Shown here in pieces: positions 6,540 to 25,715 of a DNA stretch of 32,000 bases. The stretch spans positions 60,001 through 92,000 of the forward strand of contig NW_008806281.1 of assembly GCF_000400465.1 (NCBI RefSeq), written 5' to 3'. The notes under the pieces were generated by a model. The model had not been told where the DNA came from and did not search any database. It saw nothing but the letters and a program-made list of their open reading frames with translations. The translations under genes were made by a program, and so were the position numbers. Every line of letters starts with the position of its first letter. Position 1 is the stretch's first letter. The DNA comes from Wallemia ichthyophaga EXF-994. Its lineage: Eukaryota > Fungi > Basidiomycota.

Positions 6540-9500
6540 ATGTTCGATTCATTCCCCGATATATTTGGTGGTAACGGTAGTGGCGGCGGCGGCGGCAGTG
6601 GCAGCAGTAGACACAAAGACGAAAGAAAAGCGAGAAATAGAGATGAAGATACACGCAGGCAGAGAAGGCACAGCGATAGAGATAGAGACAGGCAGCGGCG
6701 TAAGAGGAGGGAACTAGAGCGATACAATGAGGATTACGACAATAATCGATCGATTTCAAATACCACCGACTTCCGCCCACCAAAGCTCACTCACGACGAT
6801 AAGCGTTTCTTCTACACAAGCTCATTTCCTGAGAATAACCTTCTTCTTCTTGAGGGTCCTGAAATATCTACCATTCCGCGATATCGACGCTCTGGGCGTG
6901 AGTTTACTTACGGAGTTTCTGTCATGGTGCGTATGTGCTAACAATGCAATCCAACAGGCGGAAGAGTACTAGGCTTGCCTAGAGATATGCGCATTAGTGA
7001 AAAGGTGCATTACACGACGCGCAACATTATCCTCCCGTCTTCCAATGCATTGCGATCGCTGCGATCATCCAAGACACGTATGCCTGCACCCGAAAGCGAC
7101 GTGAGGCGGATAAGGTGTTCGAATAGTGACCTAAAAACAGGAGATGATTTCGTACCTGTTGTAAGTGATCGCAGGAAGGCTAAAGAACGAGAGGCGCATC
7201 AACGTGGCTTCCTCACGCTCGATGTGGACTATAGGGGAGTGAAAGGACCCTCAAAACCTGGCGCTATCGATGAGGATGTACACCCTTCTTACAGCGATGA
7301 CAGTAGCGAAGAAGACTCCAACAACACAAGGTACAACGACACACTCAACAAACGAATCGAATGGGATAGATATCTCAAAGCCTCCCCACAAGACGTGCAG
7401 GGTTGGTTGGATTATGTTGATTTTCAAAGCGATATTGTCACCCATCAGCATAACGAATTCAATAGAAAAACTGCTCAGAACGTCGTCTTGGATTTACAAT
7501 ACCAGGTGCTCGACAAGGCGCTCTCGCATCAGCCGCGCAATTTGGATCTAGTCGTAAAGAAGCTGCAATGCGGTGCGAAGGGATCGCGCGAGGGTTTGGG
7601 AAAAGATTTCAGAATTGCCATTCACAACCACAAAGGCAAGCCTGGTGTGTATAGAATATGGAAAGCTTACATAGACTACGCTCAATGTTACGCTTCAATC
7701 ATAGCACCTGGGGAATTATTCCCTAATGAGTACGACAGCTTGTGCTCATTCGAGATTGTGTCCAGGATTTATATGGACGCTTTTCGTGATTTGATTGATA
7801 TGTCTGATCTGACTCATCTGGCTGATATTGCAGCTGAAGACAACCTTCTTCAACTCTTCTTCAGATACTGCTCATTCCTCTTAAGCGCAGGATACACTGA
7901 ACGTGTATACTCCCTTTACCAAGCAATGTTTGAACTTAATTTTAGAGGCGTCCATCTGAACAAGCTTGGTGAGCTGTGGTATGACTACAAGTATAGGCGT
8001 GTTGGGGACGAGCTGACTGATGCTGAGGACGTTTATCAATTAGAGTACCCCACACACCCCAACTTTCAGCTGGAGGAGTGGCATGAGTACGAGAAATTCA
8101 ACGATGACATTGACAACGCTTTCCCTGTCGCTGGCGAGCAGAATAATAGTGATGATCCGTTTAGGAATGTTATATGGGAAGTTGACTTGTTACCATACCT
8201 GTTCAGCCTGCGTGGCTATAGCAGCAGAATGAGGCTAGCTGATAGCTTGCTAAATGTCTTTGGTATAGGTGTTGCTCTTAGCGGGTTGAACACGAATCAC
8301 CCTCTTCTCCATGACTCCCTGTTGCAGGGATCATCCAATTACAACGAGTTTTTTGAAGATAGCAGTCACTTATCCTTCAATCAACCGCAATACGTCAACA
8401 CACTCTTCCCATTCAGTGATTGTCCAACTATAATTCACAACGAGCATTTGGGAAATTTGCAGAGGATTATAGATGATTTGGGCATAACACATTTACAGAT
8501 GTTGCTATGTAAAGACGACAATCGCAAACTCAAACACTTGCTCGCGGCAAACCCTGACAAAAAGGATCTATACGATATATACGCAAGGATCCAATACGGC
8601 AAGGGTAAAATAGAAGCTGCTAGAAAGGTCTACAGCGAATGTCTGAAAGGTACAGGTGATGATGAGACCAACAAAGTCAAATTATGCTACAGTTGGTCGC
8701 ATATGGAGTTGGTGCAAGGTAATCGGAATGCTGCTCTGAATGTCTTGTGTGATGGTATTACCGTTGGAGTCGTCGATGATGGTGAGTTAGGTGATAGGCT
8801 GGTATTGATTATCCTGACTAAAACGTCTTAAGTCACTAGAGAGCAGAGTTCAATTAACATACTTAAAGCTCGCAAATTGTGGTCTTCGCAAGATTCATCA
8901 GCAGCTTTTGAGGCTGTCAGCTGTCGTGCTCTGTTTGAACTTCTCGTCAGCAGCTCGGTAGATAAAGCCGTGTCTATTTATGAGGAGTCACTGAAAAATC
9001 TTGACAAGCCATCATACGCTCATGAAGTGCTAACGTCGGAGCTGGTGCGTTTTGTTGATGCGCTAGATAAGTTGCATGACGCAGATAGATCTGTGCAGTT
9101 ACCATCGACCAGCACCACAAAGCGTATACTTAGAGGCGCTATCAGTGAATATCCCTACAATAGCTTCTTTAGCTACTCATACTACACTGCCAAAACTAAG
9201 CTCGATGGATATAGGCAGCTGTTTGACGAAGAAGTAGCCGAGAATGCACATTCGGTGGTTTACATACAAGCCGTGATGAACATTATGGATAAGAAAAGAG
9301 TTAGCAATACATCCTTGTTGAATCGGGTGAGGAGGGTGTTTACGATGGGCACTCTATCGCAGGATGCGCAACACTCTGTCGCGCTTTGGAAGCTATACTT
9401 TCAGTTCGAGTGGCATGTTGCAAGCGATTATAAGTTAGCCGAGCAGGTGATAATCAACAGTCTTAGATATTGCCCGTGGTCGAAACAGCTCCACATGCTG

Positions 9501-10437: not shown

Positions 10438-10752
10438 GAGGAGTGACGGAAATAACTTAGAATTAGGCTGGATTTGTGATTATATAGGACAGTTTCCTCA
10501 ATTTTTTGGAATCAGCTCACGCTCTTTGCTGACTGCTTCCTTTTCGTCGGAAGTCTACCGGAAACTTCCGTAAATGTATAATAAATTAAGAAGTATGTAA
10601 TATGCATTTGATAGTAAGGCAGCGTTAATTTTGTAGCTTTAAAAAATGTCCATATTAAATTTGAAAGAGGAACCATAACTGGCTGAAAAATTGAGCAATA
10701 TGTATTCAAATATTTTTGTTTTTAATTGAGTGTTTCTCGCTACGGTTATCAA

Positions 10753-10825
10753 GCCTTGCTAGCTCAATCGGTAGAGCGTGTGACTCTTAATCACAAGGCT
10801 GCGGGTTCGAGCCCCGCGTGGGGCT
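10753..10825 (+). tRNA. tRNA-Lys (anticodon CTT), no intron
   Basis: 73-nt cloverleaf GCCTTGC-TA-GCTC...GAGC-G-TGTGA-CT[CTT]AA-TCACA-AGGCT-GCGGG-TTCGAGC-CCCGC-GTGGGGC-T. A T5 Pol III terminator follows 4 nt later. Confidence 0.95.
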
Positions 10826-11014
10826 AATATTTTTGCAGTCCACAAAATTATCGGAAAACATTCAATATGATATATTCAAGGCAGCCTATGTTATTTATAG
10901 TCAAAAAAAGTTATTTTTAGAGTGATGATATTTGCTTAATTAGTAGTCCAACTCAGACTACGCTACGTTTGATCATGATGAATGACTCTTGATTAAGGCC
11001 GTGATCTTTAAGAA

Positions 11015-13112: not shown

Positions 13113-13215
13113 AGCTTTCGGCCGGAATCGAACCGGCGACCTCCGCGGAGCAACTAATCATCTCAGTAGATGAGCCGATGTTAACACGGCGCTATAACCC
13201 CTAAGCCACGAAAGC
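13113..13215 (-). tRNA. tRNA-Val (anticodon AAC) with a 30-nt intron at the canonical 37/38 position
   Basis: Reverse complement reads GCTTTCG-TG-GCTTAGGGGTTATAGC-G-CCGTG-TT[AAC]A-(TCGGCTCATCTACTGAGATGATTAGTTGCT)-C-CGCGG-AGGTC-GCCGG-TTCGATT-CCGGC-CGAAAGC. The intron contains a TCATCT/AGATGA hairpin. A T run follows immediately. Confidence 0.9.
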
Positions 13216-13235
13216 GATGGTTATGGAGTACATTT

Positions 13236-13247
13236 TGCTATATAGCA
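13236..13247. promoter_or_regulatory. Palindromic TATA element (TGCTATATAGCA) about 24-29 bp upstream of tRNA-Val; possible TFIIIB/TBP site
   Basis: Perfect 12-bp palindrome with a TATATA core, at the distance where upstream TATA boxes of fungal tRNA genes occur. Function is inferred. Confidence 0.4.
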
Positions 13248-13285
13248 TGTTTGTTTTCCAATCTCGATACAATCCAAAAAAATGA

Positions 13286-14369
13286 AAGTTTGAAAATAAC
13301 CTGAAGGAGATGGAAACCATATTACCCTATCCTTTCGTGCCGTGGGTACCTGCAACACTAAGCTTTTCACAAGCAGAGAATAAGGAACGAGCAAAAGCAG
13401 AGAATATGGAATTATGCAATCAGTACAATATGTCATGGTACATCTACACAGATGGATCTCTAGCTTAGGGGCAAGTTGCGCCAGGCTATGCAGCTAAGCT
13501 TCCACACAGACGAGACTGGTTTAGCTCATCATACAAACGGGGTCCTGACAGCAAATTCACAATTTACGAAGCAGAGTTATTGGGAGTATATCTCGCTTTA
13601 GAATGGATCGAGGAAGAGTTGATACCGCCAGTAGTCTTTATCAATAGCGACAGTCAGGCGGTACTTTCGGAGATCGTTCAATTGCAATCAACAAAGACAG
13701 GCCAATATTTGATAAAACCAGTCCTTGACAAAATTGATTGGATTAAACGAACGAAGGGAAAAAGACTTTGTTGTCCAATTAAACTGGATCCCACGACATG
13801 TGGATATTTACGGTAACGAACTAGCGGACAGAACCGCTAACGAGGGTTGGACACGGCCGACCCACCGGACTATGTGGAGTCAACTAACACTCAAAACTTC
13901 ATACTCTGCAATGCGACGCAGAATGCGCGAGCGCTATACAGCATCCCTAAAAGTAGAAGCCTCCAAAATATCAGACATTAAGTCCAACGCCGCAAAAACA
14001 TCAGCTGGAAGGCTGACAGCAGCAAAAACGGCCAAGATATTCAATGAACTGCCCAGAGCAACGAGATGCCTAGCCACCCAGCTACGGTCAGGGCATTACC
14101 CTACGACTAAGTCTTACCGTTACCGGTTCCGACTGATTGATTCACCTAAATGCCGTGCATGTGGCACAGAGGACAACATCTCCCATAGAATCTTCATATG
14201 CAGAAAACATACAATGACCAGAATCACGTTAAGAAGAAAGATTACCAAGATCAATATTCAGTTCGACTTAGGTCCAATACTCAGAAACGCACACTCTATT
14301 CAAGTCCTTTACGAGTTCTTCAAACCGCAATTAAATACGTACCAAAGATACTTCGGTGGTTCAGTGTAA
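13286..14369 (+). mobile_element. 5'-truncated, inactivated non-LTR retrotransposon (Tad/I-like) ORF2 3' end: RNase H plus CCHC knuckle
   Basis: Reconstructed frame: METILPYPFVPW...YIYTDGSLA*...TIYEAELLGVYLAL...FINSDSQAVL...(+1 frameshift in A5 run at 13759-13763)...LNWIPRHVDIYGNELAD...LATQLRSGH...CRACGTEDNISHRIFIC. In-frame TAG at 13466. No RT or endonuclease domain, poly(A) tail or TSD seen. Confidence 0.88.
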
Positions 14370-14479
14370 TTGAGAACCACCACCAATTTACATATTACGA
14401 CGCTAGTCAAGAAACGCTTCCAGTAAATTCGGAACCCCCTTTGACTCCTCATGCTTTAAGAAGTATTGATGGATGCAGT

Positions 14480-15260
14480 TTATAACATGTATCGTCTTAA
14501 AATATAATCAGATTTCATCATCATCATACCCCGTCGGACGTTTATCTTTGGACGGCACGTGAGAGTATAATTGACGACGTTACGCAGCAGAATGATCGCA
14601 CTTGGAATAATGTTCGATTGGGAGCGATACGTAACCTTGCACAGAACATACAAGCACTTCACGAGAGAGGCCACGTCCTCGTAGCTCATCTTTCCATTTG
14701 ATGCACACTGAAGTGCTAAAAGCTTCCTGCTCATCTTCTCCTACAAACAAAAAGGATTGTGACCATCTCTACTCATGTAATTTCGCTCATTTGTAATTAA
14801 TATTACGATTGAGAGGTACACAATCTTTTCATCCTCCGACCAAAGCCCCTTGCGTCTTTCTGGACAAGCAAACATCCGGTGGTAGCACTCGATGGCTGAA
14901 CGCTTGGAAATGTGCGATATCACTATCCAACAAGCTTCAAGCTGGACTGGTGCACTGAGCACGGGTTGGTTGATTGCAGTGCTTCAAATGTCTCACTCAC
15001 TCTACTAACCTATCATTCTTGTGTTTCGTCCAGACTCCTTTGTTTGCATAAGGATGCTATCGAGTTCGAACATAAGTGTATACACTTGCTAGCACTCTGT
15101 GTGAGACACACTCAGCAAGGTCATACCAGAAGTTGTCTCTGTTTTGTTGTTGCTCACTTTGTAGTTGCTGATGCAGTCATAGTCGATCCTCCTCTCTTCT
15201 TCGTTGAATGCAGAAATCAAACATCCTCTCCACAAACTTTTTCCACGCCAAGGGTATTTC
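14480..15260 (-). pseudogene. Degenerate Myb/SANT-repeat gene (Reb1/TTF1/DMTF1-like)
   Basis: Reverse translation gives DNFWYDLAECVSHRVLASVYTYVRTR*HPYANKGVWTKHKNDRLV, then after a GTGAGT...CAG intron ACWIVISHISKRSAIECYHR...RKGLWSEDE, then KLLAL...GKMSYEDVASLV. In-frame stops at 15059-15057 and 15179-15177. Boundaries are approximate. Confidence 0.6.
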
Positions 15261-15673: not shown

Positions 15674-18600
15674 CTACCAAGCTCTTCCTTGGTTTTTGCG
15701 CTTGTTTCTAAGTTTAAACTTTCTGACATTGTGTCGATCTTGAAGTTGTCGTGATGTTGTATGGGTCGATAGGGCATGTGGAGCTTCTTCGCCATGTTGC
15801 TGTTCTTGCGACTGCTTTTCCTGGCTACGTACCAGTTTTGTCCACATCGTAGCGAATAAACCATTCGAATTGAGAAGCTGAGATTCTGTACCGCTCTCAA
15901 TAACCTTACCGCCTTGAATGTAGAATATCACATCTGACTTGGTGATTGTTGAGATCCTGTTCGAGATAATAATTGTCGTTCTAGTTACGCTCAACTCCGC
16001 AAACAAAGCTTGGATCTCCTTCTCGGTGTCATCATCCAACTCCAAGCTAGTCACATCGAAGCAGAAGATTGGTGCATCTTTCAACAATGCTCTAGCTATG
16101 GCTATACGCAATTTATCACCACCGTTCAATGTGATACCTTCATCACCGATTCTGGTATCGTAGCCGTATTGGAATGAAAGTACCTTGTCGTGTAACTTAG
16201 CAACTTTACAGGCGCTTACGATCTCTTCCTTAGTAGCGCTTTCGTTACCATACTTTAAGTTGAAGGTGAAGGTCTCGTTGAATAATGGGCAAACTTGCGA
16301 GATGATGGCAATGTGTTTTCTGAGTGACTGAAGCTTCATGTCTCTGACATCAATACCATTAATGCTGATAGAACCTTTGCCGACATCGTGGAAGCGATAA
16401 AGCAAGTCTAATATCGTATTATTTCCACTGTCACCGTCACTGAAGAGCGTAATGGTCTTGCCAGTGGGAACTTCAAACGATAAGCCTTGCAGTGCATTGT
16501 CAGAGTCGTAGCTGAAAACGACATTATCGAATTTAATGACAGGTTGGCGAGTATCGAACGTGATGGCGTCAGGCTTATCAGAAACAAAGCTAAACCAGTC
16601 AAGTGACTCGATCAAAAAATTACCACCGAAGACAGAAACACCGTTGAAAATACTATCAAACTTGGAAGGGTACTCGACATCTGGCTGTGACTGGTCCTGT
16701 TTAGAAGATTCTGACAAGTCTATAAGCCTTCTGACACAATCTGTAATGCTAACAAACTCACCGTTACGGGCTTCGGTCTCTGCCTGCTTTGGATCACCTG
16801 GAGGACCATCTGACTCGTCAGATGAGGAAGAATCATCTGAAATATTTTTGACGGTTTTGTCAGAATCGCTGTCGTTATCCTCATCTTGAAGGTTCGTCCC
16901 TTCACCCTCTAGCAACTTAGGACGGCGTTGAGGAGAATTCGACGAGTCAGAAGAAGAATCATCTGAAGCATTCTTAATGGTCCTGTCTGAATCGCTGTCT
17001 TCTTCATCTTCCAACGGCCCTTCGACGTCATCACCTAAATGCTTCAGGTTGGCTTGCACATCAGACGTTGATGACCCAAGTAAAACATCACTGTAAGTAC
17101 TCCAACGCGTTCCAACTTGATCATTTACGACCTGATGATCTTGGGAAGGTCCTGAGAAATGAATAAGCTTTTAGTCAATCCAGAAAAAGCAAAAGAACAT
17201 ACCCTTTGGGTCTTTGCCGCCAATATGCTTCTCCTGGCTACGTACCAGTTTTGTCCACATCGTAGCGAATAAACCATTCGAATTGAGAAGCTGAGATTCT
17301 GTACCGCTCTCAATAACCTTACCGCCTTGAATGTAGAATATCACATCTGACTTGGTGATTGTTGAGATCCTGTTCGAGATAATAATTGTCGTTCTAGTTA
17401 CGCTCAACTCCGCAAACAAAGCTTGGATCTCCTTCTCGGTGTCATCATCCAACTCCAAGCTAGTCACATCGAAGCAGAAGATTGGTGCATCTTTCAACAA
17501 TGCTCTAGCTATGGCTATACGCAATTTATCACCACCGTTCAATGTGATACCTTCATCACCGATTCTGGTATCGTAGCCGTATTGGAATGAAAGTACCTTG
17601 TCGTGTAACTTAGCAACTTTACAGGCGCTTACGATCTCTTCCTTAGTAGCGCTTTCGTTACCATACTTTAAGTTGAAGGTGAAGGTCTCGTTGAATAATG
17701 GGCAAACTTGCGAGATGATGGCAATGTGTTTTCTGAGTGACTGAAGCTTCATGTCTCTGACATCAATACCATTAATGCTGATAGAACCTTTGCCGACATC
17801 GTGGAAGCGATAAAGCAAGTCTAATATCGTATTATTTCCACTGTCACCGTCACTGAAGAGCGTAATGGTCTTGCCAGTGGGAACTTCAAACGATAAGCCT
17901 TGCAGTGCATTGTCAGAGTCGTAGCTGAAAACGACATTATCGAATTTAATGACAGGTTGGCGAGTATCGAACGTGATGGCGTCAGGCTTATCAGAAACAA
18001 AGCTAAACCAGTCAAGTGACTCGATCAAAAAATTACCACCGAAGACAGAAACACCGTTGAATATACTACCATAATGACCAGGAAGCTCGAAAAGTGGTTG
18101 TTTCACGTCCAGGTTTGGCAGATGAACCCTCTTGAAAGACCAGTCAATCTTGCCATGGTCCTCACGAGGTTGCTTGACGTCTGGTTGCTTCACATCGACG
18201 TGTGGCTGATCAACCTTTTTGAAGTTCCCGTCAACCTTGCCATGGTCCTCACGAGATTGCTTGACGTCTGGTTGCTTCACATCGACGTGTGGCTGATCAA
18301 CCTTTTTGAAGTTCCCGTCAACCTTGCCATGGTCCTCACGAGATTGCTTGACGTCTGGTTGCTTCACATCGACGTGTGGCTGATCAACCTTTTTGAAGTT
18401 CCCGTCAACCTTGCCATGGTCCTCACGAGATTGCTTGACGTCTGGTTGCTTCACATCGACGTGTGGCTGATCAACCTTTTTGAAGTTCCCGTCAACCTTG
18501 CCATGGTCCTCACGAGATTGCTTGACGTCTGGTTGCTTCACATCGACGTGTGGCTGATCAACCTTTTTGAAGTTCCCGTCAACCTTGCCATGGTCCTCAC

Positions 18601-21600
18601 GAGATTGCTTGACGTCTGGTTGCTTCACATCGACGTGTGGCTGATCAACCTTTTTGAAGTTCCCGTCAACCTTGCCATGGTCCTCACGAGATTGCTTGAC
18701 GTCTGGTTGCTTCACATCGACGTGTGGCTGATCAACCTTTTTGAAGTTCCCGTCAACCTTGCCATGGTCCTCACGAGATTGCTTGACGTCTGGTTGCTTC
18801 ACATCGACGTGTGGCTGATCAACCTTTTTGAAGTTCCCGTCAACCTTGCCATGGTCCTCACGAGATTGCTTGACGTCTGGTTGCTTCACATCGACGTGTG
18901 GCTGATCAACCTTTTTGAAGTTCCCGTCAACCTTGCCATGGTCCTCACGAGATTGCTTGACGTCTGGTTGCTTCACATCGACGTGTGGCTGATCAACCTT
19001 TTTGAAGTTCCCGTCAACCTTGCCATGGTCCTCACGAGATTGCTTGACGTCTGGTTGCTTCACATCGACGTGTGGCTGATCAACCTTTTTGAAGTTCCCG
19101 TCAACCTTGCCATGGTCCTCACGAGATTGCTTGACGTCTGGTTGCTTCTTGTCGACCTTAGGAGATTCTAAAACGTCTATAAGCTTGGTTGAGAATTTCA
19201 AACTATAATTAAACTCACCATCAACCTTGCCATGGTCCTCACGAGGTTGCTTGACGTCTGGTTGCTTCACATCGACGTGTGGCTGGTCAACCTTTTTGTA
19301 GTTCACGTCAACCTTGCCATGGTCCTCACGCGATTGCTTGACGTTTGGTTGCTTCTTGTCGACCTTCGACTTGTCTTCTGTACCACCTACCAGCTTTGTC
19401 CACATCCTAGCGAATAAACCATTCGAATTGAGAAGCTGAGATTCTGTACCGCTCTCAATAACCTTACCGCCTTGAATGTAGAATATCACATCTGACTTGG
19501 TGATTGTTGAGATCCTGTTCGAGATAATAATTGTCGTTCTAGTTACGCTCAACTCCGCAAACAAAGCTTGGATCTCCTTCTCGGTGTCATCATCCAACTC
19601 CAAGCTAGTCACATCGAAGCAGAAGATTGGTGCATCTTTCAACAATGCTCTAGCTATGGCTATACGCAATTTATCACCACCGTTCAATGTGATACCTTCA
19701 TCACCGATTCTGGTATCGTAGCCGTATTGGAATGAAAGTACCTTGTCGTGTAACTTAGCAACTTTACAGGCGCTTACGATCTCTTCCTTAGTAGCGCTTT
19801 CGTTACCATACTTTAAGTTGAAGGTGAAGGTCTCGTTGAATAATGGGCAAACTTGCGAGATGATGGCAATGTGTTTTCTGAGTGACTGAAGCTTCATGTC
19901 TCTGACATCAATACCATTAATGCTGATAGAACCTTTGCCGACATCGTGGAAGCGATAAAGCAAGTCTAATATCGTATTATTTCCACTGTCACCGTCACTG
20001 AAGAGCGTAATGGTCTTGCCAGTGGGAACTTCAAACGATAAGCCTTGCAGTGCATTGTCAGAGTCGTAGCTGAAAACGACATTATCGAATTTAATGACAG
20101 GTTGGCGAGTATCGAACGTGATGGCGTCAGGCTTATCAGAAACAAAGCTAAACCAGTCAAGTGACTCGATCAAAAAATTACCACCGAAGACAGAAACACC
20201 GTTGAATATACTACCATAATGACCAGGAAGCTCGAAAAGTGGTTGTTTCACGTCCAGGTTTGGCAGATGAACCCTCTTGAAAGACCAGTCAATCTTGCCA
20301 TGGTCCTCACGAGATTGCTTGACGTCTGGTTGCTTCACATCGACGTGTGGCTGATCAACCTTTTTGTAGTTCACGTCAACCTTGCCATGGTCCTCACGCG
20401 ATTGCTTGACGTCTGGTTGCTTCACATCGACGTGTGGCTGATCAACCTTTTTGTAGTTCACGTCAACCTTGCCATGGTCCTCACGCGATTGCTTGACGTC
20501 TGGTTGCTTCACATCGACGTGTGGCTGATCAACCTTTTTGTAGTTCACGTCAACCTTGCCATGGTCCTCACGCGATTGCTTGACGTCTGGTTGCTTCACA
20601 TCGACGTGTGGCTGATCAACCTTTTTGTAGTTCACGTCAACCTTGCCATGGTCCTCACGCGATTGCTTGACGTCTGGTTGCTTCACATCGACGTGTGGCT
20701 GATCAACCTTTTTGTAGTTCACGTCAACCTTGCCATGGTCCTCACGCGATTGCTTGACGTCTGGTTGCTTCACATCGACGTGTGGCTGATCAACCTTTTT
20801 GTAGTTCACGTCAACCTTGCCATGGTCCTCACGCGATTGCTTGACGTTTGGTTGCTTCTTGTCGACCTTCGACTTGTCTTCTGTACCACCTACCAGCTTT
20901 GTCCACATCCTAGCGAATAAACCATTCGAATTGAGAAGCTGAGATTCTGTACCGCTCTCAATAACCTTACCGCCTTGAATGTAGAATATCACATCTGACT
21001 TGGTGATTGTTGAGATCCTGTTCGAGATAATAATTGTCGTTCTAGTTACGCTCAACTCCGCAAACAAAGCTTGGATCTCCTTCTCGGTGTCATCATCCAA
21101 CTCCAAGCTAGTCACATCGAAGCAGAAGATTGGTGCATCTTTCAACAATGCTCTAGCTATGGCTATACGCAATTTATCACCACCGTTCAATGTGATACCT
21201 TCATCACCGATTCTGGTATCGTAGCCGTATTGGAATGAAAGTACCTTGTCGTGTAACTTAGCAACTTTACAGGCGCTTACGATCTCTTCCTTAGTAGCGC
21301 TTTCGTTACCATACTTTAAGTTGAAGGTGAAGGTCTCGTTGAATAATGGGCAAACTTGCGAGATGATGGCAATGTGTTTTCTGAGTGACTGAAGCTTCAT
21401 GTCTCTGACATCAATACCATTAATGCTGATAGAACCTTTGCCGACATCGTGGAAGCGATAAAGCAAGTCTAATATCGTATTATTTCCACTGTCACCGTCA
21501 CTGAAGAGCGTAATGGTCTTGCCAGTGGGAACTTCAAACGATAAGCCTTGCAGTGCATTGTCAGAGTCGTAGCTGAAAACGACATTATCGAATTTAATGA

Positions 21601-24600
21601 CAGGTTGGCGAGTATCGAACGTGATGGCGTCAGGCTTATCAGAAACAAAGCTAAACCAGTCAAGTGACTCGATCAAAAAATTACCACCGAAGACAGAAAC
21701 ACCGTTGAATATACTACCATAATGACCAGGAAGCTCGAAAAGTGGTTGTTTCACGTCCAGGTTTGGCAGATGAACCCTCTTGAAAGACCAGTCAATCTTG
21801 CCATGGTCCTCACGAGGTTGCTTGACGTCTGGTTGCTTCACATCGACGTGTGGCTGATCAACCTTTTTGAAGTTCCCGTCAACCTTGCCATGGTCCTCAC
21901 GAGATTGCTTGACGTCTGGTTGCTTCACATCGACGTGTGGCTGATCAACCTTTTTGAAGTTCCCGTCAACCTTGCCATGGTCCTCACGAGATTGCTTGAC
22001 GTCTGGTTGCTTCACATCGACGTGTGGCTGATCAACCTTTTTGAAGTTCCCGTCAACCTTGCCATGGTCCTCACGAGATTGCTTGACGTCTGGTTGCTTC
22101 ACATCGACGTGTGGCTGATCAACCTTTTTGAAGTTCCCGTCAACCTTGCCATGGTCCTCACGAGATTGCTTGACGTCTGGTTGCTTCACATCGACGTGTG
22201 GCTGATCAACCTTTTTGAAGTTCCCGTCAACCTTGCCATGGTCCTCACGAGATTGCTTGACGTCTGGTTGCTTCACATCGACGTGTGGCTGATCAACCTT
22301 TTTGAAGTTCCCGTCAACCTTGCCATGGTCCTCACGAGATTGCTTGACGTCTGGTTGCTTCACATCGACGTGTGGCTGATCAACCTTTTTGAAGTTCCCG
22401 TCAACCTTGCCATGGTCCTCACGAGATTGCTTGACGTCTGGTTGCTTCACATCGACGTGTGGCTGATCAACCTTTTTGAAGTTCCCGTCAACCTTGCCAT
22501 GGTCCTCACGAGATTGCTTGACGTCTGGTTGCTTCACATCGACGTGTGGCTGATCAACCTTTTTGAAGTTCCCGTCAACCTTGCCATGGTCCTCACGAGA
22601 TTGCTTGACGTCTGGTTGCTTCACATCGACGTGTGGCTGATCAACCTTTTTGAAGTTCCCGTCAACCTTGCCATGGTCCTCACGAGATTGCTTGACGTCT
22701 GGTTGCTTCACATCGACGTGTGGCTGATCAACCTTTTTGAAGTTCCCGTCAACCTTGCCATGGTCCTCACGAGATTGCTTGACGTCTGGTTGCTTCTTGT
22801 CGACCTTAGGAGATTCTAAAACGTCTATAAGCTTGGTTGAGAATTTCAAACTATAATCAAACTCACCATCAATCTTGCCAGTGACTTTGCCATTGTAGGT
22901 GCGTTTGTATTCCCTGTAGTCTCTGTCAGCAGGCTGCTTCCCCTTTTCATCGACCTTTTCCTGGTGACGCTGGGTGGGTTTGCGTGTGTCTTTTTCTTCA
23001 TCATCATCTTCATCTGATCCTGAGTCTGAATCTGACGATGAATGGTCGTCCTCGTTACCTTTCTTAGCGCAGGTGCATTTCTTGCTTGTGCACTTGCCGC
23101 AATTGGAGCATCTCGAGCACTTAACGCCACTGCAGTAGCTGCAGTCCTTGAGGAGCTTAGGAAGATGATCGCCATCTTCAGTCTCACCCTCTACCTGTTT
23201 CTTCCACATGGTCGCAAACATGCCGTTAAGGCTGAGAAGGTGAGAGTGCGAACCGCTCTCAACGACGCGACCGTCCTGCACAAAGAGGATGAGGTCGGAT
23301 TTAGCGATAGTGGAGAGTCTATGAGCGATAATGATAGTAGTGCGACCCTGACTGAGCTCGTTGAATGCAGCCTGGATCTCGCGCTCTGTATTAGTATCGA
23401 GAGCCGACGTAGCCTCATCTAGACACAGTATAGGAGCGTCTTTGAGGAGAGCGCGTGCTATTGCAATGCGCTGTTTCTCCCCACCACTCAATCTTACGCC
23501 TCGCTCACCGACGCGCGTATCGTACCCGTCTTGGAAGGAGAGAATGCGCTCGTGCATCTGCGCCGCTTTCGCAGCCGATACTATCTCCGCATCTGTAGCA
23601 TCATCCTTGCCGTATTTCAAATTAAACGCGATGGATTCGTTGAAGAGGGCGCAATCTTGCGGTATGATGGCTATGAGACGACGTAGAGCATGTTGCTGCA
23701 TATCGCGCAAGTCTACCCCGTTGATAGTGATAGAACCCGCGTCGACGTCGTAGAAGCGGTAGAGAAGACGCAGAATAGTGCTTTTACCACTACCACTTTC
23801 ACCCACCAGAGCAACTGTCTGACCTGTAGGCACTTGGAACGACAAGTTATCGAGTGCGTATCCAGAACTATCATACCTGAACCCAACCCTATCGAATTTG
23901 ATGAGTGGTTGACGAGTGTGGAAAGCTACTGCGTTAGGCTTGTCGTTGATATCAGTGTGCTCGCTAAGCAGTTGCATTAGCTTCTCACTATCAACTAGAC
24001 TCGTATTAATCGAACGGTAAATCATCCCGAGATTGTTCAAAGGCACGTATAGCTGCTGGAGGAAAGTTAAGAACACTACCAGCTCTGCTGCATCAGATCG
24101 TCCTTGCGCTACTCCCGCACAAACCACTGCCGTACCCGCTGCTATACCCGAGACAATAATAACGTTCTGTGCCATGTTCAAAAGATACAGCGACGCTATC
24201 ACCTTTTTCTCCACCGCTTGGAAATTCTTGAAAGCGGTAGTGTAGCGACTGATTTCATGCGCTTCGGCTGTGAAATACTTGATCGTGTCGTAGTTGAGCA
24301 ATGCGTCCGTGTAGATCGCCCTTGTTATATTGTCCTTAGCGACGTAGTCGCGACGCTGCGCTGTGCGCCAGCGTGTGATAAGCACCGATATATACCCATA
24401 GAGGAACATGACAGACGCGATGATGAGCGACAACACCCCACCGAATTTGAAATAGAAGTAGCCGAGAGCGACACAGATATCGGCGACAGTGGGGAAGATA
24501 GAAAATAGAAGCATTTGGAAGAAGTTGTTCAAAGCTTGCCCCTTGTCGAGAATACGCAGAATCTCACCAGTCTTCCTGTGCGTGTGGAACGCCAGGCTAA

Positions 24601-25715
24601 GATTGAGGAGATGGGTGAAACAGTGAGTAGACATGTTCCGGTCTGTCCACTGTGTTATAGGAATCCAAGCGATGTTCTGGACTACTTGCAAAAGGCCTCC
24701 GGAGCCTTGGAAGAATCGAAGAGCGATATAAATGATCAAGTGCTTCCAAGGCGAGGAGTAGGAAGAGAGGTCTTCGACAACTTTACCCAACTGAATTGGA
24801 ACGAGAAGGTTGATATATCTACCGACAAGTAACAAAACAAGACAGAAGAAGGCAAGTGTTTGTAGGCGTGGTGAACCACGTGGCCAAAGGACATCACCGA
24901 GTTGATACATACGTTTCATGAACGCACCCATGCCAGCAGAAGGAGATTTGTCCTTTGCGTCGTGCGTAGCATCGTCACTAGTTGTGTCAGTTGTGTCAGT
25001 TGTGTCTTCGCTGGTTGCACCGTACTGTATAGAGTCGTTGAGCAAGGGAGAGTTCTCACCAGGCGCAGCATTGCCATGGCTGTCATACCTGACGAAGGTA
25101 GTAGTAACACCGCAAACAAGCAACGCACTTCCAATAGCAAGACATATGACGCGTAATGACTGAATCGCGATGTGTGCATATTCAATTGCAGGGAGATGCT
25201 TTGTATCTGTTCGAGTGAGATTGAGTACTAGAAACCAAAATAAACCCACCAGAATAAAATTTAAGATAGTCAATCCACGTAATAAGAAGACTCAATTCGA
25301 GGATTACCGATATAATGTAGAAAGATTGGACATAAGAGCAGATATTTTTATTTTTCTGGACCGCGTAGGCAATGGCAAGGGAACCAAAAGCATATGCTGC
25401 AGAAGCACCGATGCAATGCACGACGAGTGCCAGCCAGTGCTCGTATATGACTGGATTGCGATAAACAGATTTGAAGATAAAAAAGTGTAAAAAAGACGCG
25501 AGTAAATCAGCAAAGTAGGTAAATAGTACAGATTGCGTAATTACGAATAACCACACACGTCTGTATCTCTTTCGAGATGGCTGTGGATCTGGGGGGGAGA
25601 TATACACTCTAGCGAGACCAAATAAGACGACGGCATTGAGTAGAATAGGAATAGCATAGCGGGTAATTAGGATAACTTGCGGTGCAGCGCGCAATCCGAT
25701 TGCAATTACTGCCAT
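15674..25715 (-). CDS. HMT1: Giant HMT1/ABCB6-type half ABC transporter (~3315 aa predicted) with a C-terminal extension of repeat arrays and four degenerate NBDs; exons 25715-25250, 25206-17203, 17151-15674
   Basis: Hydrophobic N-terminal TMD0 and an ABCB6/HMT1-type TMD (RYINLLVPIQLG, LRFFQG.GGLL, FHTHRKTGEILRILDKG, DALLNYDTIKYF, QQLYVPLNNLG). Intact NBD with GESGSGKST, LSGGEKQ, LDEATSALD and IAHRLST. Introns 25249-25207 (GTGGGT...CAG) and 17202-17152 (GTATGT...GACTAA...CAG) both splice in frame; summed exons are 9948 nt = 3316 codons. Confidence 0.88.
15839..16589 (-). repeat. Degenerate ABC NBD copy 4
   Basis: Matches copy 3 at a 1413-bp offset, including the ATMWTKLVRSQEK end. It is preceded by an acidic linker instead of an 87-bp array. 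Confidence 0.92.
17252..18002 (-). repeat. Degenerate ABC NBD copy 3
   Basis: Matches copy 1 at a 3648-bp offset but ends in ATMWTKLVRSQEK. Confidence 0.92.
18143..19360 (-). repeat. One B-type unit, a duplicated pre-array linker, and 87-bp array A2 (11 full units)
   Basis: The A2 block matches A1 at a 3648-bp offset and gives the same 365-aa shadow ORF. It is preceded by one DVNYKK unit and the linker DGEFNYSLKFSTKLIDVLESPKVDKK. Confidence 0.93.
19397..20147 (-). repeat. Degenerate ABC NBD copy 2
   Basis: Appears identical by eye to copy 1 at a 1503-bp offset. Confidence 0.92.
20291..20860 (-). repeat. 87-bp coding tandem array B: 6 full units of variant DVNYKKVDQPHVDVKQPDVKQSREDHGKV
   Basis: Same period with array-specific substitutions (GN-F to VN-Y; mostly TCG rather than TCT Ser codon). 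Shadow ORF 233 aa = 24 + 6x29 + 35. Confidence 0.95.
20900..21650 (-). repeat. Degenerate ABC NBD copy 1
   Basis: Walker A reads SDGDSGNNT, signature LNGGD, Walker B FCFDVTS and H-loop ISNRIS. Ends in ARMWTKLVGG. Confidence 0.92.
21791..22800 (-). repeat. 87-bp coding tandem array A1: 11 full units of DGNFKKVDQPHVDVKQPDVKQSREDHGKV
   Basis: 87-nt period read from the sequence. Unit count from the antisense shadow ORF: 365 aa = 24 + 11x29 + 22. Confidence 0.95.
23070..23146 (-). other. 8-Cys cluster directly after the active NBD (CSYCSGVKCSRCSNCGKCTSKKCTC)
   Basis: Read directly from the long ORF: CxxC-x4-CxxCxxCxxC-x4-CxC, followed by an acidic DDHSSSDSDSGSDEDDDEE run. Confidence 0.85.

What the first reader, a model, noticed from the sequence alone, without database searches (positions are those of the whole stretch)
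20900..21650. Pseudo-NBD has lost the main catalytic residues while keeping the fold
Aligned by eye to the gene's own NBD: Walker A GESGSGKST becomes SDGDSGNNT (Lys lost), LSGGEKQ becomes LNGGDKL, Walker B DEATS becomes DVTSL (catalytic Glu lost), and H-loop AHRL becomes SNRI. The A-loop Tyr, Q-loop Gln, D-loop Asp, hydrophobic core and domain length are retained, and well over half the positions look identical or conservative. Established: these residues are required for ABC ATP binding and hydrolysis. Inference: an old intragenic NBD duplicate under selection for structure rather than catalysis, amplified only recently.
Basis: partly seen in the sequence, partly recalled or inferred. Interest (0 to 1): 0.7.

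Follow-up and report, generated by a model that had tools for sequence, protein, structure and literature searches.

The report
Dead ATPase domains on a transporter
A metal-transporter gene of the salt-loving fungus Wallemia ichthyophaga carries extra copies of its ATP-burning domain that have lost the ATP-site residues but kept the fold, an unusual, undescribed layout known so far only from one short-read assembly.

Summary
Window 20890-21715 (- strand) encodes an ABC nucleotide-binding domain (NBD) that is 60% identical to the gene's catalytic NBD. It has a dead Walker A (SDGDSGNNT), Walker B Glu changed to Val, H-loop His changed to Asn, and signature LNGGD.

The gene is the annotated 3298-aa "heavy metal tolerance protein" of Wallemia ichthyophaga EXF-994. 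It holds four such copies, not one. The last copy carries the ancestral HMT1 C-terminal tail.

Three other Wallemia species have a normal single-NBD HMT1. No closer relative turned up among 1.84 billion protein representatives.

Selection for the fold is supported:
- All 64 hydrophobic core columns stay hydrophobic, while 22 of 52 conserved polar columns are lost.
- Replacements are conservative.
- There are no stops or frameshifts.

However, the branch dN/dS of 0.3-0.6 is not significantly below 1.

"Old" is supported, because silent sites against the gene's own NBD are near saturation. "Copy of its own NBD" is not shown: trees place the domain with another Wallemia species' NBD, on few sites.

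"Recently amplified" cannot be judged. The reference is a K=21 short-read assembly, so four nucleotide-identical copies and 22 identical repeat units may be reconstruction artefacts.

The function is inferred, not shown.

The parts
15674..25715 (-). Whole gene: Wallemia ichthyophaga EXF-994 'heavy metal tolerance protein' (EOR01095.1 / XP_009267886.1), 3298 aa
   Evidence: P0250 is a cluster member that matches the window translation. The locus maps to KE007231.1 65674-95715.
25250..25715 (-). Exon 1: N-terminal membrane helices (TMD0)
   Evidence: An ORF from ATG 25715. It joins the main ORF as in the annotated models P0121 and P0250.
25207..25249 (-). 43-nt intron (GTGGGT..CAG). It accounts for the apparent one-base frame offset.
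   Evidence: Sequence read. The junction YLKFYS|DTKHL in P0121/P0250 aligns with W. mellicola YIKVYTHNSLPK.
24041..24850 (-). ABC exporter transmembrane domain (Pfam ABC_membrane)
   Evidence: Pfam PF00664, 113.7 bits, aa 142-411 of the ORF.
23174..23944 (-). Catalytic NBD with all canonical motifs intact
   Evidence: Motifs located. Pfam ABC_tran 120.9 bits. It is 79-80% identical to the NBDs of two other Wallemia species.
23054..23161 (-). Cys-rich cluster (CSYCSGVKCSRCSNCGKCTSKKCTCAKKG) immediately after the catalytic NBD
   Evidence: Translation and composition (22% Cys). It is also present in other strains' partial proteins.
21743..22796 (-). Array 1 of 87-nt (29-aa) charged repeats, 12.1 copies
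   Evidence: Tandem Repeats Finder. The units are nucleotide-identical. GRAVY is -1.6 and 42% of residues are charged.
20890..21715 (-). Pseudo-NBD copy 1, the finding. It comprises a pre-NBD segment (SIFNGVSVFGGNFLIESLDWFSFVS) plus a dead NBD.
   Evidence: The AF2 model has pLDDT 86. Its best structural match is the human ABCB6 NBD, TM-score 0.85-0.89.
20288..20858 (-). Array 2 of 87-nt repeats (the VNYKK variant), 6.6 copies
19387..20212 (-). Pseudo-NBD copy 2, nucleotide-identical to copy 1
18095..19148 (-). Array 3 of 87-nt repeats, 12.1 copies. With its flanks it differs from array 1 at only 2 of about 1960 nt.
17242..18067 (-). Pseudo-NBD copy 3. It is identical to copy 1 except for the last ~30 nt and its tail.
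17152..17202 (-). 51-nt in-frame intron (GTATGT..ACTAA..CAG) that contains the TAA ending the 2700-codon ORF
   Evidence: Sequence. The junction PKG|PSQ appears in the annotated protein P0250.
16655..17151 (-). Last linker: unique, acidic and Ser-rich. It holds a candidate 51-nt intron (GTGAGT..CAG) at 16711-16761.
15829..16654 (-). Pseudo-NBD copy 4
   Evidence: Translation. It is identical to copy 1 from -69 to +729 nt. Pfam ABC_tran matches at 54.9 bits.
15674..15828 (-). Ancestral HMT1 C-terminal tail (...LRNKRKNQGRAW) plus the stop codon
   Evidence: It matches the C-termini of normal single-NBD HMT1 proteins: HRNKRKTKGTIW (P0122) and QKNKRRNKGKVW (W. mellicola).

Best explanation
**What it is.** The region is a supernumerary, catalytically dead NBD, that is, a pseudo-ATPase domain. 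It arose when the 3' part of a Wallemia HMT1/ABCB6-type half-transporter gene was duplicated in tandem. The duplicated segment ran from the end of TM6 through the NBD to the start of the tail. As a result, the catalytic NBD is now followed by linkers and by NBD-shaped domains, and the last of these carries the original C-terminal tail.

**What happened since.** The duplication is old, about as old as the split from the nearest sampled Wallemia species. Since then the ATP-site residues have been replaced far more often than other conserved positions, while the hydrophobic core has been kept. These include the P-loop Lys/Ser and two Gly, the catalytic Glu, the H-loop His, the signature Ser and the X-loop. 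The domain therefore very probably folds like an NBD but cannot bind or hydrolyse ATP.

**Shown:** the domain's identity, the loss of the motifs, the fold-level purifying selection and its lineage restriction.

**Inferred:** it is translated as part of a roughly 3300-aa protein and sits in the cytosol on long disordered, charged tethers.

**Most likely mode of action (low confidence, about 0.2).** It works through protein-protein contact. It may act as a tethered, non-hydrolysing partner or brake for the catalytic NBD, forming a half-dead NBD sandwich. Alternatively it may act as a multivalent scaffold. The main alternative is that it is only a foldable spacer, tolerated because misfolding would be costly.
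For: **Motifs and similarity.**

**Annotation.** The annotated 3298-aa gene model has the same introns that I derived from the sequence.

**Tail orthology and absence of the extension elsewhere.** The tail is orthologous to normal HMT1 tails. The extension is absent in W. mellicola, in species P0122 and in a third Wallemia species.

**Selection on the fold:**
- 14 of 27 canonical ATP-motif residues are changed.
- Among near-invariant columns, 20/38 are changed within 2 residues of a motif against 11/67 elsewhere (p=1.4e-4).
- Outside the motifs, 16% of invariant columns are changed against 42% of variable ones (p=0.001).
- 64/64 core columns stay hydrophobic, while 22/52 conserved polar columns are lost (p=1e-9). 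Neutral simulations expect 8.6+-2.6 core losses, and none of 3000 runs gave zero. They expect 5 stop-creating hits, with P(none)=0.009.
- The mean BLOSUM62 score of replacements is +0.27, against -0.61+-0.14 under neutrality.

**Fold.** The AF2 model has pLDDT 86 and pTM 0.83. Its top structural matches are the ABCB6 and Atm1 NBDs, TM-score 0.85-0.89.

**Age.** Silent sites against the gene's own NBD differ at 0.65-0.69.
Against: - Branch omega for the pseudo-NBD is 0.30-0.60 and is not significantly different from 1 (p=0.06-0.52).
- 30% of columns that are near-invariant in catalytic NBDs are changed. These include the X-loop and D-loop, which weakens the idea of canonical docking to a TMD or to a partner NBD.
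- No orthologue exists in any other species or database searched, so conservation between species cannot be tested.
- The domain is known only from one short-read assembly. I found no transcript, peptide or literature evidence.
- The AF2 model was built from an alignment of catalytic NBDs and is biased towards that fold.
- The intact reading frame could partly reflect selection to keep the downstream tail in frame.
Confidence: 0.55

Rival explanations
1. It is a slowly decaying, functionless relic. The duplicated NBD lost its function and drifts. The frame stays open only because the C-terminal tail must be translated, or because gross misfolding is selected against. On this view the domain itself does nothing.
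For: - Branch omega is 0.30-0.60, 20-40 times the background, and not significantly below 1.
- 31 of 105 near-invariant columns are changed.
- No orthologue is conserved in any other species.
- Sister lineages function with a single NBD.
Against: - None of the 64 hydrophobic core columns is lost, against 8.6 expected (P<1/3000).
- Replacements are conservative, and there are no stops or frameshifts.
- Constraint is strongly heterogeneous between sites.
- A pure in-frame-spacer constraint would not preserve the core.
Confidence: 0.25
2. The array is largely an assembly artefact. One or a few pseudo-NBD copies and a collapsed repeat were replicated by the short-read assembler or gap closer. On this view neither four identical copies nor a 'recent amplification' is a property of the genome.
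For: - The reference was assembled from 500-bp and 2-kb Illumina libraries with SOAPdenovo at K=21.
- 22 of the 87-nt units and all four ~800-nt pseudo-NBD cores are 100% identical.
- Units A and C differ at 2 of about 1960 nt.
- Strain E3P91 is 99.95% identical up to window 22816. It then shows 13 mismatches in about 250 nt, and its variant repeats are absent from the reference.
- All other strains' contigs end inside the repeats or in the downstream dispersed repeat.
Against: - The assembly contains three different downstream junctions: ...VGGTEDKSK, ...VRSQEKHIGG and ...VRSQEKQSQE.
- It also contains at least two different upstream junctions to the pseudo-NBD. If these are read-derived, they need at least 3 copies.
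- Copy 4 has unique flanks on both sides.
Confidence: 0.4
3. It is not a duplicate of the resident NBD. Either the duplication predates the split from the P0122 lineage, which later collapsed back to one NBD, or the [NBD+tail] segment came from another Wallemia lineage.
For: - The pairing pseudo+P0122 gets NJ 98%, protein-ML RELL 0.90-0.91 and codon-ML RELL 0.74-0.90. The pairing pseudo+own NBD gets 1-10%.
- The domain is 66% identical to the P0122 NBD and 60% to its own.
- Four-fold sites differ at 0.47-0.50 against P0122 and at 0.65-0.69 against its own NBD.
Against: - Only 3 two-state informative sites support pseudo+P0122, against 1 for pseudo+own NBD, and all are conservative toggles.
- The codon-ML difference of 7-11 lnL is not significant (KH z about 1).
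- The silent distance between pseudo-NBD and P0122 matches the species-level baseline of the neighbouring FAD gene (0.52), so no transfer is needed.
- 'TED' after the NBD is shared by copies 1/2 and the resident NBD, but not by other species.
- Composition is native.
Confidence: 0.3
4. It is still a nucleotide-binding regulatory NBD with a non-canonical site, like the degenerate sites of asymmetric ABC exporters.
For: The A-loop Tyr, Q-loop Gln, Walker B Asp and most of the signature (L-GG) are retained.
Against: - The Walker A Lys and Ser are both Asn, and two P-loop residues are Asp (SDGDSGNNT).
- Known degenerate sites keep the Walker A Lys (established knowledge; compare PMC12038006).
- All P-loop family Pfam side hits are lost.
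Confidence: 0.05

Closest known systems
Degenerate NBDs / degenerate nucleotide-binding sites of asymmetric ABC exporters (TAP1/TAP2, TM287/288, BmrCD, CFTR and other ABCC NBD1, fungal Pdr5, MsRv1273c/72c)
   Same: An NBD that keeps the ABC fold but carries non-consensus catalytic residues: catalytic Glu, H-loop His and signature. The signature LNGGD recalls the N-containing degenerate signatures of fungal PDR proteins (my own knowledge). It is expected to be non-hydrolytic.
   Different: - Known degenerate NBDs are one of the two obligatory NBDs. Each is attached to its own TMD, keeps the Walker A Lys and still binds ATP.
- Here the dead NBDs are extra (3-4 per chain) and have no TMD.
- They hang on disordered tethers of 170-370 aa.
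- They have lost the Walker A Lys/Ser and gained two acidic P-loop residues.
- The X-loop is altered.
HMT1 / ABCB6 / Atm1-type half-transporters (S. pombe Hmt1, human ABCB6, bacterial and yeast Atm1)
   Same: The N-terminal ~870 aa is an ordinary member: TMD0, a six-helix exporter TMD and a consensus NBD. It is 75-78% identical to the HMT1 of other Wallemia species and about 50% identical to that of other basidiomycetes. The pseudo-NBD model matches the ABCB6 and Atm1 NBD structures best.
   Different: No described member, and none of the 1.84e9 representative proteins scanned, carries additional NBD-like domains after the catalytic one. Here the normal C-terminal tail is displaced by about 2400 aa.
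Tandem pseudoenzyme domains that regulate an adjacent active domain (e.g. the JAK JH2 pseudokinase next to the JH1 kinase)
   Same: The logic is the same: an intragenic duplicate of a catalytic domain loses catalysis, keeps the fold, and is retained in cis (my own knowledge).
   Different: A regulatory role is demonstrated for those pseudokinases. Here it is only inferred. The fold family is different, and the domain is repeated several times.

Membership tests
Catalytic ABC ATPase domain (ABC_tran, PF00005) | Walker A GxxGxGK[ST] | tested here: not met
   The motif reads SDGDSGNNT. Lys is changed to Asn, Ser to Asn, and two Gly are lost.
Catalytic ABC ATPase domain (ABC_tran, PF00005) | Walker B hhhhD followed by the catalytic Glu | tested here: not met
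   ILCLDE has become IFCFDV. The Asp is kept and the Glu is now Val.
Catalytic ABC ATPase domain (ABC_tran, PF00005) | Signature LSGGQ/E and H-loop His | tested here: not met
   The signature reads LNGGD, and the H-loop His is now Asn.
Catalytic ABC ATPase domain (ABC_tran, PF00005) | Q-loop Gln, A-loop aromatic residue and D-loop Asp | tested here: met
   IISQV, FSYD and LELD.
Catalytic ABC ATPase domain (ABC_tran, PF00005) | Sequence-profile membership and NBD fold | tested here: met
   Pfam scores 55.9 bits against a cut-off of 25. The AF2 model has pLDDT 86 and TM-score 0.85-0.89 to the ABCB6 NBD 3nha. The fold is predicted, not solved.
Catalytic ABC ATPase domain (ABC_tran, PF00005) | ATP binding and hydrolysis | not testable with these tools
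   This needs the purified domain.
HMT1/ABCB6-type half-transporter (whole gene) | TMD0 plus exporter TMD plus a single consensus NBD, orthologous to fungal HMT1, in conserved synteny | tested here: met
   Pfam domains. Identity is 75-78% to Wallemia HMT1. There is a colinear 4.9-kb alignment at 73% with the upstream FAD-binding gene conserved. The C-terminal extension is an addition to this architecture.
Asymmetric ABC exporters with one degenerate ATP site | The degenerate NBD is one of two TMD-coupled NBDs and retains nucleotide binding (Walker A Lys present) | tested here: not met
   No TMD precedes any pseudo-NBD. The Walker A Lys is absent.
Processed or decaying pseudogene fragment | Stops, frameshifts, and substitutions blind to structural class | tested here: not met
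   There are no stops or frameshifts. No hydrophobic core column is lost (0/64) while 22/52 conserved polar columns are. Neutral simulations reject this pattern. Branch omega alone does not exclude neutrality.

The most novel reading that the evidence does not exclude
A half-size ABC transporter has evolved a cis-tethered array of dead NBDs. These dock onto its own or neighbouring catalytic NBDs and create, on demand, an asymmetric sandwich with one competent ATP site. This would give a homodimeric exporter a built-in brake or gain control, or would cluster transporters on the membrane through multivalency. The Cys-rich and His-containing charged tethers may serve as metal-sensing or metal-collecting elements. 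Supernumerary pseudo-NBDs would then be a previously unknown way of regulating ABC transporters.
Probability: 0.12. Interest if true: 0.8.

Novelty: new variant of a known kind. Interest (0 to 1): 0.55.

Why it matters
Degenerate NBDs are a central topic in ABC transporter mechanism, but they have always been studied as one of the two obligatory, TMD-coupled NBDs that still bind ATP. A natural protein carrying extra, TMD-less, P-loop-dead NBDs that are still kept foldable would be a clean test case. It could show what an NBD can do without nucleotide, whether that is docking, braking or scaffolding, and how pseudoenzyme domains arise by intragenic duplication. It also occurs in the most halophilic fungus known, in a metal-detoxification transporter, next to a metallothionein-like Cys cluster. 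Finally it is a caution: the locus cannot be trusted in detail until it is resolved with long reads.

Tried and rejected
1. **A frameshift or sequencing error at the N-terminus (about window 25260).** Rejected. A 43-nt intron with the right phase restores the frame and matches both orthologues and annotation.

2. **The fourth NBD-like ORF (15674-17059) as a separate gene.** Rejected. It has no ATG before the domain, it is in frame, a 51-nt GTATGT..CAG intron removes the TAA, and the annotated model agrees.

3. **Horizontal acquisition inferred from unusually low silent divergence to species P0122.** At first this looked significant: p4 was 0.47 against 0.65 for the HMT1 core. It weakened for two reasons. 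Tests on matched sites were not significant, and the neighbouring FAD gene gave a species baseline of 0.52. I kept it only as a minor rival.

4. **Pairwise dN/dS.** It was uninformative for most pairs because dS is saturated. I therefore wrote a branch codon model. The first version had un-normalised branch lengths that hit their bounds, and I discarded it.

5. **Searches for orthologous pseudo-NBDs.** All found nothing closer than catalytic NBDs at 46% identity or less, apart from Wallemia HMT1:
   - the 5.8e9-protein word search;
   - an exact DNA pattern and peptide patterns against metagenome contigs;
   - an exhaustive HMMER scan;
   - an exact-protein contig look-up.

6. **Recovering the pseudo-NBD region from other strains through the downstream neighbour gene.** This failed because their contigs end in a dispersed repeat at window 13215/13425.

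7. **The linkers as degraded copies of the TMD.** No similarity was found by tblastx or blastn.

8. **Literature and supplements.** Searches for this gene, for pseudo-NBDs and for expression data found nothing specific.

9. **Pfam on the RNase-H-like ORF downstream.** No hit.

Full report
**What is in the sequence**

The window is part of scaffold KE007231.1 of the Wallemia ichthyophaga EXF-994 reference genome. The finding lies inside a 2700-codon ORF on the minus strand, 25273..17171. That ORF is the main exon of the annotated 3298-aa "heavy metal tolerance protein", EOR01095.1 / XP_009267886.1.

The gene runs from 25715 to 15674. A first exon with N-terminal membrane helices is joined through a 43-nt intron at 25249-25207. 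The TAA that ends the long ORF sits inside a 51-nt in-frame GTATGT..CAG intron at 17202-17152.

From the N-terminus the protein contains:
- TMD0, an exporter TMD and a fully consensus NBD at window 23944-23174;
- a Cys-rich cluster and an acidic stretch;
- three units, each made of an array of 87-nt (29-aa) charged repeats followed by an NBD-like domain;
- a unique acidic linker, a fourth NBD-like domain at 16654-15829, and a basic tail.

The finding's coordinates are the core of the first NBD-like domain.
- GESGSGKST to SDGDSGNNT;
- LSGGEKQ to LNGGDKL;
- LDEATS to FDVTSL;
- AHRL to SNRI.

The A-loop Tyr, Q-loop Gln, Walker B Asp and D-loop Asp are kept. Identity to the gene's catalytic NBD is 155/258 (60%), with 76% positives and a single one-residue gap. 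The X-loop is also changed, from GERG to GDEG.

Pfam still recognises ABC_tran at 55.9 bits, against 120.9 for the catalytic NBD. Every P-loop side hit has disappeared.

An AlphaFold2 model has pLDDT 86 and pTM 0.83. It superposes best on the human ABCB6 NBD and on bacterial Atm1, with TM-score 0.85-0.89. That model was built from an alignment of catalytic NBDs, so it shows compatibility with the fold, not proof of it.

**Where the domain comes from**

The basic tail after the fourth copy (...LRNKRKNQGRAW) is the orthologue of the normal HMT1 C-terminus. Compare ...HRNKRKTKGTIW in an unnamed Wallemia species (P0122, 907 aa) and ...QKNKRRNKGKVW in W. mellicola (886 aa).

Those two species, and a third Wallemia species recovered from metagenomes, have a single NBD followed directly by the tail. 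They share the same upstream neighbour, an FAD-binding gene.

The segment before each pseudo-NBD (FLIESLDWFSFV) plausibly aligns by eye with the post-TM6 segment SLVDSEKLMQLL. The simplest history is therefore a tandem duplication of the segment from the end of TM6 through the NBD to the start of the tail. Such a duplication leaves the original tail behind the distal copy.

No closer relative of the pseudo-NBD exists in any collection I could search. The 5.8e9-protein search gave at most 45% identity. The metagenome contigs gave at most 46% over full-length matches. The exhaustive scan of 1.84e9 representatives gave W. mellicola HMT1 at 59%, and everything else at 40% or less.

**Does it group with its own NBD?**

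- The pseudo-NBD falls inside the Wallemia HMT1 clade with 100% bootstrap.
- It is 66% identical to the P0122 NBD, 62% to W. mellicola's and 60% to its own.
- An NJ tree with outgroups gives pseudo+P0122 98% and pseudo+own 1%.
- Exhaustive protein ML over all 105 six-taxon trees gives RELL 0.90-0.91 against 0.02.
- My codon ML prefers pseudo+P0122 trees by 7-11 lnL units, but the KH z is only about 1.
- Only 3 two-state informative sites support pseudo+P0122 against 1 for pseudo+own, and all are conservative toggles.
- A "TED" motif just after the NBD is shared with the resident NBD only.

Silent sites between the pseudo-NBD and the resident NBD are near saturation (p4 0.65-0.69). Pseudo against P0122 gives 0.47-0.50, close to the species baseline of the neighbouring FAD gene at 0.52.

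I conclude that the duplicate is old, about as old as the split from the P0122 lineage. Three histories remain open:
- an in-lineage duplication followed by divergence of both copies;
- an older duplication that later collapsed in other lineages;
- a transfer between Wallemia lineages.

**Selection**

A branch codon model that I wrote gives omega 0.30-0.60 for the pseudo-NBD branch, depending on topology, against a background of 0.013-0.018. The model is GY94-type with F3x4 frequencies, on 5 sequences and 250 codons. Equality with the background is rejected (p<=1.6e-7). Omega=1 is not rejected (p=0.06-0.52).

Other tests, which do not depend on the saturated dS, are clear:
- 14 of 27 canonical ATP-motif residues are replaced.
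- Among columns that are at least 95% invariant in 112 catalytic HMT1-type NBDs, 20/38 within two residues of a motif are changed, against 11/67 elsewhere (p=1.4e-4).
- Outside the motifs, 16% of invariant columns are changed against 42% of variable ones (p=0.001).
- All 64 hydrophobic core columns remain hydrophobic, while 22 of 52 conserved polar or charged columns are lost (p=1e-9).
- Neutral mutation simulations stopped at the observed 82 amino-acid differences expect 8.6+-2.6 core losses. None of 3000 runs gave zero.
- The same simulations expect 5 stop-creating hits, with P(none)=0.009.
- Accepted replacements average BLOSUM62 +0.27, against -0.61+-0.14 under neutrality.

This is the signature of relaxed but real purifying selection on the fold, with constraint on the ATP site relaxed and its residues largely replaced.

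**"Amplified only recently" cannot be evaluated**

The four copies are identical over about 800 nt. Twenty-two 87-nt units are identical. Two ~2-kb units differ at two bases.

The reference genome was assembled from 500-bp and 2-kb Illumina libraries with SOAPdenovo at K=21 (PMC3849046). Such an assembly cannot resolve this structure.

A resequenced strain is 99.95% identical to the window up to 22816. It then shows 13 mismatches in about 250 nt, with repeat variants that occur nowhere in the reference. This suggests the reference arrays are homogenised reconstructions.

All other strains' assemblies break in the repeats, and in a dispersed repeat downstream at 13215/13425.

Three distinct downstream junctions and at least two distinct upstream junctions argue for at least three real copies. 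Only long reads or read depth can settle the number.

**How it probably works**

The extension is cytosolic by topology, since it follows the cytosolic NBD. The repeats are highly charged and hydrophilic (GRAVY -1.6, 42% charged residues). They are probably disordered, which is an inference from composition.

The pseudo-NBD cannot bind ATP in the canonical way. It has no Walker A Lys or Ser and has two Asp in the P-loop. It lacks the catalytic Glu and the H-loop His.

I therefore read it as a folded, nucleotide-independent module on a flexible tether. Its most likely action is contact with the catalytic NBD, as a non-hydrolysing partner or brake, or multivalent scaffolding. I put this at about 0.2. 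Changes in the X-loop and D-loop argue against fully canonical docking. A merely tolerated, foldable spacer is the main alternative.

**Comparison with known systems, and novelty**

The closest known systems are the degenerate NBDs of asymmetric ABC exporters (for example PMC12038006). Those are obligatory, TMD-coupled and still bind ATP.

The gene as such is already annotated in public records. I found no description of its pseudo-NBD array, and no other protein with supernumerary dead NBDs, in the literature or databases I searched.

I rate it a new variant of a known kind. It is interesting if confirmed, but it rests on a single short-read assembly and a single species.

Noticed in passing
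window 23054-23161 (-): A metallothionein-like Cys cluster (CSYCSGVKCSRCSNCGKCTSKKCTCAKKG, 22% Cys) sits directly after the catalytic NBD of a metal-detoxification transporter. It is present in all strains' partial proteins. It may be a metal-binding element.
   Followed up: partly
window 21743-22796, 20288-20858, 18095-19148 (-): There are three arrays of 87-nt (29-aa) charged repeats with two His per unit. The start of the repeat (SKVDKKQP) resembles the ancestral tail (MSKQPQEAHQNGE) of other Wallemia HMT1 proteins, so the repeats may have grown out of the old C-terminal tail. The 22 units are nucleotide-identical in the reference but variant in another strain.
   Followed up: partly
window 16711-16761 (-), and the homologous GEF[D/N]YSLKF... 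segments near 22867 and 19219: Each linker unit begins with an in-frame 51-nt GTGAGT...AG candidate intron. It is annotated as an intron only in the last unit of the reference and in the first unit of one other strain's model (P0249). The annotation is therefore inconsistent.
   Followed up: partly
window 13221-14369: These ORFs carry an RNase-H-like motif (WIPRHVDIYGNELADRTA) but have no Pfam hit. Contigs of two other strains end at 13215 and 13425. This is probably a fragment of a dispersed retroelement, lying in an otherwise unannotated 2.7-kb gap downstream of the gene.
   Followed up: partly
window 14456-14528; L002 9240-9320: An 81-nt block, 75% identical between W. ichthyophaga and species P0122, lies downstream of HMT1 in both. 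It is not a tRNA and its nature is unknown.
   Followed up: no
L007 about 7362-7430: In a third Wallemia species an intron splits the second Gly codon of the LSGGE signature motif. W. ichthyophaga has no intron there in either the catalytic NBD or the pseudo-NBDs.
   Followed up: no
window 23174-24939 compared with L002: The catalytic NBD of W. ichthyophaga is less conserved against species P0122 (80% aa) than its TMD is (86%). This is the reverse of the P0122 / W. mellicola comparison (90% against 87%). The HMT1 core also has higher four-fold-site divergence (0.65) than the neighbouring FAD gene (0.52).
   Followed up: partly
window 23209-23224 (-): The reference reads MFATMW at the end of the catalytic NBD, where the three other-strain models I read (P0121, P0243, P0249) have MFAAMW. 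Pseudo-NBD copies 3 and 4 also read ATMW, while copies 1 and 2 read ARMW.
   Followed up: no
window 10752-10826 (+): tRNA-Lys (CTT).
   Followed up: no
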